NCBI RefSeq assembly: GCF_006345805.1
Contig: NC_043013.1
Coordinates: 22,010,001 to 22,074,000 of the forward strand
Origin: Octopus sinensis
Lineage: Eukaryota
Length of the DNA: 64,000 nucleotides
Direction: 5' to 3'
Position 1 is the stretch's first letter; every line of letters starts with the position of its first letter. The position numbers were made by a program, and so were the translations under genes. Below are positions 867-38,874 of this stretch, piece after piece. Below the pieces are notes generated by a model. It had not been told where the DNA came from, searched no databases, and saw nothing but the letters and a program-made list of their open reading frames with translations.

Positions 867-1097
867 GAATATGTCCTTTAGATTTTATTGACAAAGCCGC
901 TATACCTTCTAACTATGATTTGGGTTTCTTTTCTGGTTCCAATTATACGCAATGTCTGCTCAATTGCGAAGCAATACCAACTTGCCAATCGTTTGACTAT
1001 AACTTTAATTACAAACGATGCTTGTTGTTATCTAAAGATCATACAACTGCTCAATTGAATTTTTACACAGATTGGACTTACACCGAAATAAACAGAG
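867..1097 (+). CDS. PAN/Apple-domain internal exon, unit A (231 nt, phase 1-1): (G)ICPLDFIDKAAIPSNYDLGFFSGSNYTQCLLNCEAIPTCQSFDYNFNYKRCLLLSKDHTTAQLNFYTDWTYTEINR
   Basis: Acceptor is cttcttattcttacag|GA and donor is AGAG|gtaagg. Length is a multiple of 3 with no stops. It has the PAN pattern C-x3-C-x5-C-x-S-F-x-Y...C-x-L and an NYT sequon. Its paralog is at 33901. Confidence 0.9.
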
Positions 1098-1289
1098 GTA
1101 AGGGCGTCATTTTCTTGTTTTTATTTATTTTTTTGTTGTTGGAATTATACACAGTCAGTTGGACAAGACTTAGGCACCACCTTCAAAAATGTGTTAGTCT
1201 GTTATATTGAGGTTGCGACTTTGATTTACTTGGCTCTATCGATTGGCTAAGTCCAATGTCATATAAAGGTATGGACTCAATAACTAATT

Positions 1290-1625
1290 AGATAGATAGA
1301 TAGATAGATAGATAGATAGATAGATAGATAGATAGATAGATAGATAGATAGATAGATAGATAGATAGATAGATAGATAGATAGACAGACTGACAGGAAGA
1401 TAGACAGACTGACAGGCAGATAGACAGACTGACAGGCAGATAGACAGACAGACAGACAGGTAGACAGACAAGTAGACAGACAGATGGCTAGATAGATAGA
1501 CAGATAGATAAATAGATAGATAGATAGATAGATAGATAGATAGATAGATAGATAGATAGATAGATAGATAGATAGATACATACATACATACATACATACA
1601 TACATACATACATGCACACGCATAC
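1290..1625. repeat. (GATA)n/(GACA)n/(CATA)n compound microsatellite
   Basis: Direct reading. Confidence 0.97.
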
Positions 1626-1639
1626 ACTCATACGTACAG

Positions 1640-2305
1640 ATAAATACTAATACTTGATGAGCAATAGGAACATAGATAGCACCAAACCTCCATACTGTGA
1701 TGGAAAATGTCGGCTCTGCTATACCAGTGTGGAAGATGTCACCCACATCATCAGTAGTTGCGACAAAATGCCTACGAGATTCTATCTGCCCCTGAGGCAT
1801 GATATAGTTGCGAAGACTATTTACAATGCAATGCTACCCATAGGAAGGACTGCTCGGACGTATAGATCAAAGCCATGTTAGAACCATCAAGTAATCAGAT
1901 CATATGAAAGCAAGGAATACTGTTGGAACTCTCACCACCAAAAACAAAGAACAATTGGTGCAGAGATAGAAGACCTGATATTGTTCTTTGGCACAGGGAA
2001 AAAAAGCTATGCATTGTTGTAGGGGTAAACTACCCAGCGGGTGTGAATGTACAATCAAAAGTTTTAGTAAAATAGAACATTTAAGAAAAACTTACAGGTC
2101 TTGTACCCTGACCATAAAGTCTCGTTTGCACCTTTCATCAGAAGTGCTTTAGATTATGTACCAACAAATATGCACATTTGCAGAAAAACCTATAAATACT
2201 CGGTTTCACAGAGAAAGAGCAAAAGAAAAACTGACGCGGATTGTCCAAATCCAATCTTTTAGTGGCACAGTGAAGATTTGTAAAACATTCCCAAAATACT
2301 CCATC
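1640..2305 (+). mobile_element. R4/Dong-clade LINE 3' fragment (zinc knuckle plus restriction-like endonuclease), decayed
   Basis: Translates to [32 protein letters not shown], then RRPDIVLW, and ends in VKICKTF. Confidence 0.85.
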
Positions 2306-2399
2306 TGTGGTTCTTATGTCAATAGATGCATACGATTGAGTGTATGCATCGACAGTGCCACCAACACACCAACTCAACCACATATTTGCAATCACCGGG

Positions 2400-35530: not shown

Positions 35531-37835
35531 TATGTAAATTGAGGGACTAATTAAAGACCAAACTATTGATCACTCCTATTAGACACACACACACACACAC
35601 ACACACACACACACACACACACACACACACACACACGATTAAGCACATAAATGCAAAACAAGGTGGAAAGAAGTAGGACTCAAGTACCGAAGGTAGGGTA
35701 TTATGCTCTCTTTTTATTCAAGCTGCAAAAACATCACAAAAAACTGTTACCGTTTCACGTTTCCGTCGTCTAACATTTGTGATCAAGAATGGAATAAAAT
35801 TGTGATGGTACATGTAATATATAATTTGATGTAATGCAATTTAAGGCATAAGCATTGGAATTTGGTTGGGTAACTTATATTCAAATTATAAACAGTATTG
35901 TATTCGTTAACGGTTGGTCGAATTGAGGGTTATAAATTGAACAGTAAAATATATTATATTATCTATATATGTAAAAGAGAGTTTGTGTGTGTATGTGTGT
36001 ATGTGTGTGTGCGTGTGTGTGTGCGTGTATGTGTGTATGTGTGTGTGTGTGTGCGTGCGTGTATGTTCCTTATGTATTCGAAAGCTGTGTTGCCGATTTT
36101 GACGTGTGGGGTATCATAAGATTCATTAATCTTTCGGCTACCAAATAAACTATATTTTTATTTCCATATTTTCGAAAATGTACACATAAATATCGTACTA
36201 AAATAAGCTACAACCAAAAATATTTCATTAAAAGACAAACATATTTCTATATGTCAAGAGGAAATACAGTCACTCACCCTCCCTTTCTCTCTCCCTCTCT
36301 CTCTCTCTCTCTCTCTCTCTCTCATGCACACGCACTCATACACACTAAAAAGAATGTATTCAAATGTATTTATGTACGTGTATATGAAAGACAATGTATA
36401 TGTGTGTGTGTGAGAGAGTGAGTTACTTAGACAGACAGGCAAAATAATACATACATGACAACACACACACACACGGTAAAACTTCTGTACGAATCATGTT
36501 ATTTCTCACTGTGTGCACGCCCAAAATTACAGCTGAACTCCACTTAAAAGGTTCTTTTACTATTCTGTAATTTGTGTTTGTGATGAATTTATTTTGAAAA
36601 CCTGATCTTCGGTAAAAACTGAAAATGAATTTTTCCCAGAAATTCTGTCCTTTACCTGTCGCCTCTAGCATGTCGTCTCTAGCATGACATTTGCGCCCCA
36701 CGCCTCTATTTTTCCCTAAACTTCTTCCGATTCCTACGTATTTGATAGAGTAATTTAGGATTTCGCCAAAACAATTCGTTCTCTATATTTTAATCTTCTC
36801 TCTCTCTCTCTCTCTCTCTCTCTCTCTCTCTCTCTCTCTCTCTCTCTCTCTCTCTCTCTCTCTCTCTCTCTCTCTCTCTCTCTCTCTCTCTCCATAATTG
36901 ACAGTAAATAAAACACATATATTAAAGAGGTAAGGATTTCTTATATAAAATCATCTTATGTAAATAGGGAAGTCGATTGTATTAAAGAGATTAGGATTTC
37001 TTGATTAATAGTAAAGAAATCACGGAAGATATTAAGATCATCAGAAGAATAAGAAACTATTTTTATTCCATTTCAGTACTTTGGAACGAATTCAAACAGT
37101 CAAATTCACTGGACAAGATTAACTCTGTGGGATGTGGTATAATATTTTTCGACTCTTATTATTTCGTTGACAGTAAGACCCTCTTTTCGTTTATTTTTTG
37201 TGTTTTTCGTTTCTGTTTCTGGTTTCTCGTCTTTAATTCATTGATCTCTAGTTCTTGCCACAAAAAATTAAAAAATAAATAAATATCTCTTTCTTCTACA
37301 TCACATAAGTATTTCTACTTAGAAACTTAATTCTTAATTAAATATATTAACAGTAAATTAATGATTAATATTCATTCAAAAGGATGTTGTAAAACAACCC
37401 ACAAATACATTTAAAATCTGGCAAATGGATTAATATTAATCTCCGTTGTCATTAAAATTCTCAACACGCTTCCTTACTAATCTGCAAAGAAATACCTCAA
37501 TACATCTCGCCGGTAATACGAGAACCACTCTCCCTCCGAGACACCCAACAACATACCCCTTCTCACTCTCCCGTCATACATGCTATTTCACCAGCCAGAT
37601 CCCACATCAATTATTATCCCCAGTCCTTCCTTTCTAGATTATGCAACACTCACGAACTCACTCCCTACTCACACTAACCTAAAGATGTCCAAACGGAACA
37701 TGAATAAAATCGATCTATCGAATCAATAGGCCACATCTATTCGTTTCCCTTGTACTTTGTCAGACTAGAGCAATAATTTAATTTATGCTCTTATATTTAT
37801 TGTGTTTCCTCTTTCCAATTTTTTTTCTATTGCAG

Positions 37836-38026
37836 AAAAAGAAACTAATGACTTTACAGCTTATTCAACATTTTCCTTCAAACCAAACCCATATCCCAAC
37901 CTTGTAACCGAGGCCCAAATGGATGCTCACTCGGTTCTGGATTGTTCCCGTTTATGTTTGATATCTTCTACATGTACCGCCTTTTCATATACTAACACTA
38001 AGTGCCTAAAGAAGAAACTGATCTGA
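37836..38026 (+). CDS. Terminal PAN/Apple exon, unit B: EKETNDFTAYSTFSFKPNPYPNLVTEAQMDAHSVLDCSRLCLISSTCTAFSYTNTKCLKKKLI*
   Basis: Acceptor is ttttttttctattgcag|AA, phase 1, joining 34125 in frame (R-E-K). It has the S..DC...C.....C.AFSY....C.L pattern, then TGA followed by AATAAA. Confidence 0.87.
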
Positions 38027-38138
38027 ACTTTAATGGAATTCACCCCCAAAATTACTTCTCAATGAAGTGTGAGCAAGACTTCAACGTATCACGTTTGCTA
38101 ATAATAATTATATAAGATAAAATGTGTATTTCTTTGTG

Positions 38139-38144
38139 AATAAA
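38139..38144 (+). terminator. Polyadenylation signal AATAAA, unit B
   Basis: It lies about 113 nt after the stop and is conserved with unit A. Confidence 0.6.
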
Positions 38145-38874
38145 ATCAATTTAATTCAGTTATTTCTTTTGTTGATTAATTTTAATTGCTAACGTTTTTT
38201 TCCTTTTTAGCCTTCTCTTAGAAATCCATTCACACATTTGAAAGTTTATAAGATTATTAAATTTACTTGAGTACCCATGAAGCAATTGGGTGTTATTTTA
38301 TCGACCTTCAAAGAATGAAACACTAATTTAACCTGGACAGCATTTTGTTACAAAACGTAATGGGTCTTATCTAAATACCACAAGCAGTTGAACCGAATTG
38401 TAACACTTCTTACCCATAATCTAAATATTATACCAAATAAAAAGCTTGCATTTGTCTGATTTCTTTTGAGAAGTGAAAGAATTTCCAATTCAACCTAAAA
38501 ATAATGATGAAGATAGCATCGAAAGGTTTTCTGAAGAATATGGTAAACATTTCACGAGAATTATTGTACGTCTTCCATTGTAAGAAAGCACCAAAAATCT
38601 TAGGTAACATGATTGCTAATTTTAGTTTCAGCTCTGGTCTCTTGCAAGTCTAAACGAATTTTATTAAAGTTTACAAAGCCAATTTAAAATAAAAATCTTT
38701 GTTTTCTCTTAAGACAAAATTTTGTATTTCAGCAACTTATTTTGCATATAATGTCGGTAGAGGTTAAACGAAATCCGAAATAAATAACACGTAAAACAAA
38801 ATTCAATAGAAATTCGTTCATCAATACAGCAGCTCGATAAGTTCTGATTTTTGGAGGGTTATACATAGCTATTG

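What the first reader, a model, noticed from the sequence alone, without database searches (positions are those of the whole stretch)
867..38865. Variable/constant asymmetry: penultimate PAN exons about 36% identical, terminal exons about 87%
By hand alignment, exon 867 versus exon 33901 gives 27/76 identical residues with a 2-codon indel. Identity is concentrated in the Cys core (SG.NY.QC...CEA.P.CQSF.Y) and the YT.INR end, and the intron flanks are homologous but diverged. The adjacent terminal exons share 55/63 residues after frame correction and sit in a 1.5-2 kb block whose non-coding DNA is also highly similar. One simple duplication should give both exons the same age. Inference: either the 3' block was recently gene-converted or re-duplicated onto a different upstream exon, or the penultimate domain is under strong diversifying selection. 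Either route gives a variable recognition domain joined to a constant module, as expected of an immune or recognition family.
Basis: partly seen in the sequence, partly recalled or inferred. Interest (0 to 1): 0.75.

Follow-up and report, generated by a model that had tools for sequence, protein, structure and literature searches.

The report
Mosaic octopus PAN-domain gene pair
Two neighbouring octopus genes for small secreted three-PAN-domain proteins share a young, exchangeable tail but carry old, fast-changing middle domains; this mix of gene conversion and positive selection is well known from other recognition gene families but has not been described for this one.

Summary
The window is Octopus sinensis CM016875.1:22,010,001-22,074,000. 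It holds two tandem paralogues of an octopod family of secreted proteins (signal peptide, PAN1, PAN2, a 32-aa 'MID' exon, short PAN3). Gene B is LOC118766702. Gene A is unannotated, has its 5' end outside the window and carries a 1-nt frameshift.

- **A versus B.** PAN2 exons are 27/75 identical (dS 0.84). PAN3 exons are 55/63 identical (dS 0.125) inside a 1.2-1.4 kb block that is 86-89% identical, non-coding DNA included.
- **Not a steady rate difference.** Between O. sinensis and O. vulgaris orthologues, PAN2 and the 3' block diverge about equally (3.1% vs 2.1-3.3%).
- **Not constraint on PAN3.** Against Argonauta, PAN3 is no better conserved than PAN2 (28% vs 31%).
- **Trees conflict.** A groups with L003/L009a for PAN2 (100%) but with B for PAN3 (77%). 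The two O. bimaculoides genes group by orthology for PAN2/MID but by species for PAN3 (99%).

So the 3' and 5' modules are exchanged among paralogues while the PAN2 lineages stay old. PAN2 also shows 21.5 nonsynonymous to 0.5 synonymous changes across three orthologue pairs.

The pattern is family-wide and the A/B exchange is not recent. An immune role is untested.

The parts
867..1097 (+).
   Evidence: AG/GT boundaries read. Pfam PAN_1 32.8 bits. Closest PAN2 relatives are L003 (82% nt) and L009a (74%), clade support 100%.
4853..5679 (+). Gene A intron segment shared with A-type paralogues only
   Evidence: 92% identical to L003 and 91% to L009a/L010a; no match to gene B.
5680..6863 (+). Gene A copy of the family's conserved 3' module (MID exon, intron, PAN3 exon, 3' UTR)
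   Evidence: 86-89% identical to gene B 36894-38223. 80-89% identical to every other paralogue, including O. bimaculoides copies.
5868..5963 (+). Gene A MID exon (32 codons, phase 1-1, one Cys)
   Evidence: tblastn to the MID segment of RefSeq models. Splice sites read.
6470..6661 (+). T6 run at 6504-6509 against T5 in all other copies gives a +1 frameshift; read as assembled, the stop is at 6628-6630
   Evidence: No protein-coding gene is called here in the public annotation.
13828..13858 (+). Gene B (LOC118766702) exon 1, start codon and first part of the signal peptide
   Evidence: MLRRNYLQII found in frame with a GT donor. CDS offset agrees with the record coordinates.
19087..19122 (+). 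Gene B exon 2, rest of the signal peptide
   Evidence: LFYISLTFGNG with AG/GT boundaries.
18698..20072 (+). Gene B copy of the family's conserved 5' module (exon 2, intron, PAN1 exon and flanks)
   Evidence: 85-87% identical to all paralogues over about 1.4 kb.
19697..19954 (+). Gene B PAN1 exon
   Evidence: Exact match to P0010 residues 23-108. Groups with L009a, 94% support.
33901..34125 (+).
   Evidence: Exact match to P0010. Pfam PAN_1 26.2 bits. 7 nonsynonymous and 0 synonymous differences from the O. vulgaris orthologue.
36894..38223 (+). Gene B copy of the conserved 3' module. Homology to L009a/L010a continues to about 42061
37077..37172 (+). Gene B MID exon. Open with intact splice sites, but skipped in the RefSeq and O. 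vulgaris models
   Evidence: 4 nonsynonymous to 1 synonymous difference from the orthologue.
37836..38026 (+). Gene B PAN3 exon with stop (KKKLI*). An alternative internal donor lies after 37973
38484..38583 (+). Gene B alternative last exon used by the RefSeq model XP (P0010)
   Evidence: tblastn match to P0010 residues 230-265.

Best explanation
**What is there.** The window holds two tandem members of an octopod-specific family of small secreted proteins. The architecture is signal peptide, PAN1, PAN2, a 32-aa linker exon (MID) and a short PAN3. Gene B is O. sinensis LOC118766702. Gene A, about 7 kb upstream, is an unannotated and possibly dead copy.

**Why the asymmetry exists.** The genes are mosaics.
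- The PAN2 exon and its immediate intron flanks belong to old lineages that predate the O. bimaculoides split. A is in the L003/L009a lineage and B is in another. These blocks are not exchanged between paralogues.
- The 5' module (PAN1 with upstream intron) and the 3' module (MID, PAN3, UTR) have been repeatedly copied between paralogues. The process is non-allelic gene conversion or unequal recombination within the long introns, that is, concerted evolution.
- Those modules therefore coalesce much later. For A and B this is at K of about 0.12-0.15, before the sinensis-vulgaris split.

**Second process.** PAN2 also takes amino-acid replacements at or above the neutral rate, while PAN3 is under purifying selection.

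**Shown.**
- Unequal dS and unequal flank divergence.
- Incongruent trees between the PAN2 and PAN3 blocks.
- Roughly equal orthologue rates in PAN2 and the 3' block.
- A nonsynonymous excess in PAN2.

**Inferred.**
- The molecular mechanism of exchange.
- Sequence divergence and/or selection keeps PAN2 out of the exchange.
- PAN2 is the ligand-binding, specificity-determining domain.
For: 1. **Unequal divergence, A vs B.** PAN2 has dS 0.84 and dN 0.53. MID has dS 0.11. PAN3 has dS 0.125 and dN 0.065. PAN2 flanks are 65-67% identical; the 3' block is 86-89% identical, introns and UTR included.
2. **Orthologue rates are similar.** Osin vs Ovul: PAN2 exon 3.1%, 3' block 2.1-3.3%, background 2.5%. 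Pooled PAN2 flanks are about 3% and PAN3 flanks about 1.5%. A steady rate difference is therefore at most about 2-fold, not 4-7-fold.
3. **Tree conflict.**
   - PAN2: {A, L003, L009a} 100% and {A, B} 0%.
   - PAN3 block: {A, B, Ovul-B} 77%.
   - O. bimaculoides L008 groups with its orthologues L002/L011 for PAN2 (83%) and MID (100%), but with the other O. bimaculoides gene L007 for PAN3 (99-100%).
4. **Informative-site counts switch between blocks** (Fisher p = 7e-5, 2e-7 and 3e-10 for three quartets).
5. **The pattern is family-wide.** Flanks of PAN1 and PAN3 have medians of 84-87% over the full 300 bp. PAN2 flanks have a median of 73-74% over only 78-114 bp, and 26 of 90 comparisons give no alignment. 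Mean protein identity is PAN1 73.5%, PAN2 47.5%, PAN3 77.3%.
6. **PAN3 is not intrinsically slow.** Argonauta vs Octopus identity is PAN3 28% and PAN2 31%.
7. **Positive selection on PAN2.** Pooled orthologues give 21.5 N: 0.5 S in PAN2 (pN/pS about 10; binomial p 0.008-0.05 against neutrality). PAN1 gives 11:4 and PAN3 gives 5:5.
Against: - A-B is only slightly closer than A is to other paralogues in the PAN3 block (89% vs 85-88%).
- {A, B} support is 77%, not decisive.
- In one quartet the PAN3 block splits 14:14 between A+B and A+L009a.
- No sharp conversion breakpoints were mapped.
- The near-uniform 85-89% identity among all 3' modules looks more like one burst than like ongoing conversion.
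- PAN2 flanks diverge about twice as fast as PAN3 flanks between orthologues, so part of the contrast may be rate.
- dS estimates rest on 42-46 synonymous sites.
- The selection test pools only 22 substitutions. One pair (L011/L002) contributes 14 of them and is less clearly orthologous (95-96% identity).
Confidence: 0.7

Rival explanations
1. The PAN2 cassette, not the tail, was swapped. B is by descent an L009a-like (A-type) gene whose PAN2 block was replaced, by unequal crossing-over or conversion, from another lineage and then diverged fast. Its similarity to A in the 3' module is simply shared ancestry within the A-type group. This is a variant of the mosaic explanation with the opposite direction.
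For: - B's PAN1 block groups with L009a (94%).
- B's MID block groups with L009a/L010a and A (89-91%).
- B's 3' module plus about 4 kb of downstream intergenic DNA aligns continuously with the 3' end of L010a/L009a at 86% over 5.3 kb.
- B's PAN2 exon (66-67% to its nearest relative, L004) is far more diverged than its own immediate flanks, which are 79-82% identical to the L002/L004/L009b type.
Against: - No donor PAN2 closer than 67% exists among the sampled copies.
- A's PAN1 lies outside the window, so A's own affinity at the 5' end is unknown.
- In the PAN3 block L009a does not group with A+B.
Confidence: 0.3
2. One simple tandem duplication of equal age, with strong diversifying selection alone driving PAN2 apart.
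For: - N:S is 21.5:0.5 in PAN2 between orthologues.
- PAN2 omega is 0.6-1.06 in paralogue pairs, against 0.3-0.56 for PAN3.
- B's PAN2 exon is more diverged than its flanks.
Against: - Synonymous sites (0.84 vs 0.125) and non-coding flanks (65-67% vs 86-89%) differ too.
- Selection on the protein cannot reverse well-supported tree topologies.
- PAN2 lineages are shared across species (L005 with Obim L007, 99-100%; L002/L011 with Obim L008, 83%), whereas the 3' modules are not.
Confidence: 0.08
3. The 3' block looks young only because it is functionally constrained as DNA (splicing or UTR regulatory elements, RNA structure), non-coding parts included.
For: - The second half of the PAN3 exon is almost invariant, even at synonymous sites, in all copies and species.
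- PAN3 omega is low between orthologues (0.28).
Against: - Between O. sinensis and O. vulgaris the 3' block diverges at the background rate or faster (2.1-3.3% vs a 250-bp-window median of 1.6% and an overall 2.5%).
- PAN3 is no better conserved than PAN2 against Argonauta.
- Constraint does not explain the species-wise grouping of the two O. bimaculoides PAN3 blocks.
Confidence: 0.05
4. Assembly artefact: the second 3' block is a mis-placed haplotype or collapsed copy.
For: - The O. sinensis assembly does contain near-identical unplaced duplicates of a family member (L005/L006).
- Gene A's frameshift lies in a homopolymer, a typical long-read error site.
Against: - A and B 3' blocks differ by 11-14%, with indels including a 160-bp one. 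That is far beyond haplotype divergence.
- B's block is present at the syntenic place in an independent O. vulgaris assembly at 97-98%.
- A's block is flanked on both sides by unique, collinear A-type sequence.
Confidence: 0.02

Closest known systems
PAN/apple domain superfamily (Pfam PF00024/PF08276/PF14295); nearest solved structures by sequence are the galactose-binding apple-domain lectins Sarcocystis muris SML-2 (2YIL) and Toxoplasma MIC4 (4A5V), and the plasminogen N-terminal PAN domain
   Same: The Cys-core motif matches, and Pfam scores are above the gathering cut-off for PAN2 and PAN3. A profile of the family hits 2YIL at E = 2.4e-4 through the PAN2 region.
   Different: These are short secreted proteins with three PAN domains, the last ending a few residues (5-7) after its fourth Cys. 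There is no protease, kringle or adhesive-repeat context. Similarity to solved proteins is weak, and binding specificity is unknown.
Multigene families that combine concerted evolution of scaffold regions with diversifying selection on a binding region (for example MHC and KIR genes, abalone VERL repeats, snail FREPs, conotoxin and snake-toxin genes). From my own knowledge, not tested here.
   Same: Tandem paralogues. Homogenised 5' and 3' modules, non-coding DNA included. An old, hypervariable, exon-sized block with a nonsynonymous excess. Trans-species lineages of the variable block.
   Different: The domain type differs (PAN/apple). The taxon is octopods. There is no evidence here for somatic diversification, for polymorphism within populations, or for any particular biological role.
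Annotated family members: O. sinensis LOC118766702 (gene B), LOC118766705, LOC118766713, LOC118766692, LOC118761179; O. bimaculoides LOC106868906 and LOC106882685; Argonauta hians Ahia01_000849900
   Same: Same exon order and phases, and the same signal peptide and C-terminal ending (C.LKK..*). Gene B is identical to XP (P0010) over its exons.
   Different: Gene A has no protein model and carries a frameshift. Gene B's model skips MID and uses an extra 3' exon.

Membership tests
PAN/apple domain (Pfam PAN_1/PAN_2) | Profile match above the curated gathering score | tested here: met
   PAN2-A scores 32.8 bits and PAN2-B 26.2 bits (PAN_1 cut-off 21.4). PAN3-B scores 24.6 bits on PAN_2 (cut-off 21.1) and 22.2 on PAN_1. 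Whole proteins P0010 and P0009 score 43-62 bits.
PAN/apple domain (Pfam PAN_1/PAN_2) | Conserved cysteine core (C...C.....C.........C) with a hairpin-helix fold | tested here: inconclusive
   The Cys core is invariant in all 10 PAN2 sequences. The AlphaFold model had mean pLDDT 45, with only the PAN2 region at 70-82, so the fold was not confirmed and no fold search was run.
Octopod SP-PAN1-PAN2-MID-PAN3 family | Same exon order, phases and C-terminal ending as annotated members | tested here: met
   Gene B equals P0010 exon by exon. Gene A has PAN2, MID and PAN3 exons in the same order and phase.
Octopod SP-PAN1-PAN2-MID-PAN3 family | Intact reading frame (functional member) | tested here: not met
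   This applies to gene A only. One extra T in the run 6504-6509 shifts the PAN3 frame, and no gene is called there. Whether this is a real mutation or an assembly error cannot be told. Gene B is intact.
Concerted evolution / non-allelic gene conversion | Adjacent segments of the same genes give significantly different trees | tested here: met
   Bootstrap conflict between the PAN2 and PAN3 blocks. Informative-site heterogeneity p = 7e-5 to 3e-10.
Concerted evolution / non-allelic gene conversion | In the exchanged segment, paralogues within a species are closer than orthologues between species | tested here: met
   O. bimaculoides L007+L008 group at 99-100% for PAN3 but are orthologous to different O. 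sinensis genes for PAN2 and MID. For A/B, the neighbours group at 77%.
Concerted evolution / non-allelic gene conversion | Delimited conversion tracts with mapped breakpoints | tested here: inconclusive
   The sliding-window identity of A against all copies shows shifting nearest neighbours but no sharp A-B tract. GENECONV, RDP and GARD are not available here.
Diversifying (positive) selection on PAN2 | Nonsynonymous rate exceeds the synonymous or neutral rate | tested here: met
   Pooled orthologues give 21.5 N: 0.5 S (pN 0.039, pS 0.004, intron K about 0.025). Binomial p is 0.008-0.05. Fisher p against PAN1+PAN3 is 0.002. The sample is small.
Diversifying (positive) selection on PAN2 | Codon-site models identify selected sites; polymorphism shows balancing selection | not tested
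Immune or recognition receptor family | Expression in immune or contact tissues, induction on challenge, ligand binding | not testable with these tools
   No expression or binding data. No paper on the family was found.

The most novel reading that the evidence does not exclude
Octopods carry a previously undescribed germline repertoire of secreted three-PAN-domain proteins. A homogenised scaffold (PAN1, MID-PAN3) displays ancient, positively selected PAN2 'cassettes'. That would make it a lineage-specific recognition system (pathogen glycans, gametes or chemotactile cues), with specificity kept diverse by excluding PAN2 from the gene conversion that keeps the rest uniform.
Probability: 0.25. 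Interest if true: 0.7.

Novelty: new member of a known kind. Interest (0 to 1): 0.45.

Why it matters
Cephalopods have no adaptive immunity, and few of their lineage-specific recognition gene families have been analysed.

This family is uncharacterised and restricted to octopods (Octopus and Argonauta). It is tandemly expanded and secreted. It shows two classic signatures of a molecule facing a changing partner: a variable domain with a replacement excess, and scaffold modules kept alike by exchange between copies.

The result gives a concrete set of genes and a concrete domain (PAN2) to test for glycan or protein binding, tissue expression and population polymorphism.

For annotation, it also shows that simple duplication dating fails in this family, and that several gene models are chimeric or partial (P0006 fusion, MID skipping, gene A missing).

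Tried and rejected
1. **Recent frameshift truncating PAN3.** I first thought PAN3 had been cut short by a recent shared frameshift, because the sequence after the stop reads PAN-like in another frame. I rejected this.
   - Argonauta and distant O. bimaculoides relatives end at the same place.
   - The Pfam gain from 'restoring' the frame is negligible: 22.2 to 22.8 bits.
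2. **Exon-limited hypermutation of PAN2.** Within the A-type clade the flanks are as diverged as the exon: A-L009a 75/74/82% and A-L003 83/82/71% for upstream/exon/downstream. Orthologue divergence at PAN2 is only 3%. Not supported as the main cause.
3. **A very recent A-B conversion tract.** The 86-nt identical run in PAN3 is shared by nearly all paralogues, so it is not specific to A and B.
4. **MAFFT identities for the 350-bp flanks.** These are unreliable for PAN2 because of microsatellites and indels. I replaced them with local alignments.
5. **Structure prediction from the 7-sequence alignment.** It gave a poor model (pLDDT 45), so no fold search was run.
6. **Four literature searches** found nothing on octopus PAN/apple proteins.
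7. **The O. vulgaris orthologue of gene A.** It could not be fetched, because no annotated protein lies there. This leaves two things untested in a second species: the frameshift, and whether A's 3' module is B-like.

Full report
**Identity of the window.**
- The peptides of the two 'penultimate' exons and the 'terminal' exon are PAN/apple domains.
- A protein search returned only Octopus proteins.
- One of them, O. sinensis XP for LOC118766702 (P0010), matches the window exon by exon.
- Its record coordinates place the window at CM016875.1:22,010,001-22,074,000.
- The O. vulgaris orthologous region (L001) aligns to window 18609-48141 at 95-98%.

**Gene structure.**
- Family members are about 280 aa: a signal peptide split over two small exons, a PAN1 exon, a PAN2 exon, a 32-codon exon I call MID (phase 1-1, one Cys) and a short PAN3 exon ending C.LKK..*.
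- Gene B has these exons:
  - exon 1, 13828-13858
  - exon 2, 19087-19122
  - PAN1, 19697-19954
  - PAN2, 33901-34125
  - MID, 37077-37172 (skipped in the RefSeq model)
  - PAN3, 37836-38026
  - an alternative last exon, 38484-38583
- Gene A lies upstream on the same strand, with its 5' part outside the window. Its exons here are PAN2 867-1097, MID 5868-5963 and PAN3 6470-6661.
- A has one extra T in a T-run (6504-6509) that all other copies lack. No protein-coding gene is called there.
Gene A may be a pseudogene, or the extra T may be a homopolymer assembly error.

**The observation.**
- PAN2 of A and B share 27/75 residues with a 2-codon gap.
- PAN3 of A and B share 55/63 residues after skipping the extra T.
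- Self-comparison gives 5680-6161 vs 36894-37366 at 85.8% and 6163-6863 vs 37528-38223 at 89.3%, with a weak tail to 7093/38814.
- The PAN2 exons and flanks are not detected at word size 11. Sensitive alignment gives 65-67% in the flanks.

**Age or rate?** Nei-Gojobori estimates for A vs B:

| Exon | dS | dN |
|---|---|---|
| PAN2 | 0.84 | 0.53 |
| MID | 0.11 | 0.08 |
| PAN3 | 0.125 | 0.065 |

- To separate age from rate I used orthologues. Between O. sinensis and O. vulgaris, gene B's PAN2 exon differs by 3.1% and the 3' block by 2.1-3.3%. The overall figure across the aligned window is 2.5%, and the 250-bp-window median is 1.6%.
- Over three orthologue pairs the PAN2 flanks differ by about 3% and the PAN3 flanks by about 1.5%.
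- A steady rate difference is thus at most about two-fold. It cannot give the 4-7-fold contrast.
- The 3' block is also not constrained DNA.
- Against Argonauta hians, which has the same architecture, PAN3 is no better conserved than PAN2 (28% vs 31%; PAN1 40%). PAN3 is therefore not intrinsically slow.

**Tree conflict.** I fetched eleven more family loci from O. sinensis, O. vulgaris and O. bimaculoides and built neighbour-joining trees with bootstrap for each block.
- For PAN2, A groups with L003 and L009a (100%) and never with B. O. bimaculoides L007 groups with L005 (99-100%), and L008 groups with L002/L011 (83%). The PAN2 lineages therefore predate that species split.
- For the PAN3 block (300 bp of intron, the exon, and 200 bp downstream), A groups with B (77%). 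The two O. bimaculoides genes group with each other (99-100%). L004 joins L002/L011 (96%).
- For MID, L008 still groups with its orthologues (100%), and A, B and L009a form a group (91%).
- Counts of informative sites in three quartets switch between blocks, with Fisher p of 7e-5, 2e-7 and 3e-10.
- Rate differences cannot produce this. Exchange of the 3' module between paralogues can.

**It is a family property.**
- A's PAN3 block is 85-89% identical to every copy, O. bimaculoides copies included. B is the best match only by a point or two.
- B's 5' module (18698-20072) is 85-87% identical to all copies.
- Orthologous non-coding identity between O. bimaculoides and O. sinensis is 86.6-91% (L011 vs L008). 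The 5' and 3' modules of all paralogues therefore coalesce at about the depth of that split, while the PAN2 clades are much deeper.
- Flank statistics agree:
  - PAN1 and PAN3 flanks have medians of 84-87%, with PAN3 and upstream PAN1 flanks aligning over essentially all 300 bp.
  - PAN2 flanks have medians of 73-74% over 78-114 bp, and many pairs cannot be aligned.
- Mean pairwise protein identity is PAN1 73.5%, PAN2 47.5%, MID 70.7% and PAN3 77.3%.
- Other mosaics were seen:
  - B's PAN1, MID, 3' module and 4 kb of downstream DNA are L009a-like.
  - A's downstream flank is L002/L008-like.
- I cannot tell whether the 3' module moved onto A/B or a PAN2 cassette moved into B. I list the second as a variant.

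**Selection.**
- Across three O. sinensis / O. vulgaris orthologue pairs, the nonsynonymous : synonymous counts are:
  - PAN2 21.5 : 0.5
  - PAN1 11 : 4
  - MID 7 : 2
  - PAN3 5: 5
- PAN2 differs from PAN1+PAN3 (Fisher p = 0.002). Against neutrality, p is between 0.008 and 0.05.
- pN in PAN2 (0.039) exceeds the intron divergence (0.025).
- B's PAN2 exon is also more diverged from its nearest relatives (66-67%) than its own flanks are (79-82%).

**Function.**
- The family is restricted to octopods in a library of 1.84 billion proteins. Beyond it lie generic multi-PAN proteins.
- The nearest solved structures by sequence are apicomplexan galactose-binding apple-domain lectins and plasminogen PAN. 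This is a weak lead towards ligand or glycan binding.
- The structure model was too poor to use. No paper on these proteins was found.
- 'Immune or recognition family' remains a reasonable but untested guess. Reproductive or chemosensory roles would fit the same signatures.

**Verdict.**
- This is a real feature, correctly seen.
- It is best explained by mosaic evolution: concerted evolution of the scaffold modules, old PAN2 lineages, and positive selection on PAN2.
- The kind of evolution is well known. Its occurrence in an uncharacterised octopod PAN family is new.
- It is not recent, it is not specific to this pair, and one of the two genes may be dead.

Noticed in passing
window 34259-35532: A mariner/Tc1-like element lies about 130 bp downstream of gene B's PAN2 exon. 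It has terminal inverted repeats (CGAGGGGCGTTCAATAAGTAATGC...) and TA flanks. The orthologous O. vulgaris site is empty. A 92% copy sits in the opposite orientation in the L009/L010 paralogue intron.
   Followed up: partly
window 28892-33588: A 4.7-kb non-LTR retrotransposon insertion lies in gene B's PAN1-PAN2 intron and is absent from O. vulgaris L001. The 529-aa ORF on the minus strand matches RVT_1 and zf-RVT just below their Pfam cut-offs. Other RT fragments are at 24137-25346 and 47390-48338.
   Followed up: partly
window 37077-37172 and 37973/38484-38583: The RefSeq model of gene B skips the intact MID exon. It also uses an internal GT donor in the PAN3 exon, joined to a further exon, which removes the last two Cys of PAN3. 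MID shows 4 N : 1 S against the orthologue, as if it is no longer used in B. MID carries the sixth Cys that PAN2 (5 Cys) would need for an apple-type disulphide.
   Followed up: partly
window 37930-38015 and 6565-6650: The second half of the PAN3 exon is almost invariant, even at synonymous sites, in all paralogues and three species. This is tighter than the surrounding block. It could reflect the internal splice donor, an RNA structure or editing substrate, or a conversion hot spot.
   Followed up: no
L003 9270-9880 and 38640-39330 (O. sinensis LOC118761179, unplaced scaffold): This paralogue's PAN1 exon is clearly more diverged than its flanking intron (78-83% vs 86-96% upstream). Its PAN3 exon is slightly more diverged than its flanking intron (75-80% vs 78-83% upstream). 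Omega is about 0.5-0.9. This suggests accelerated or relaxed evolution of the whole protein in one copy.
   Followed up: no
L005 and L006 (O. sinensis unplaced scaffolds VCDQ01005557.1, VCDQ01003266.1): The same family gene occurs on two unplaced scaffolds: it encodes an identical protein at nearly the same coordinates, and both give identical matches to the window. These are probably uncollapsed haplotigs, so copy numbers taken from this assembly are inflated.
   Followed up: no
window 600-720 and 33585-33700: An (ATT)n microsatellite sits at the same relative position, about 150-260 bp upstream of the PAN2 exon, in both A and B. It is a conserved feature of an otherwise poorly alignable intron, and it inflates naive flank identity.
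   Followed up: partly
L009 (O. vulgaris protein P0006): The O. vulgaris gene model P0006 fuses two adjacent family genes (L009a and L009b) into one 298-aa protein and skips PAN2 of the first. P0014 (2643 aa, 13 matched stretches) is much longer than the roughly 280-aa family members, but I did not examine how it is built.
   Followed up: no
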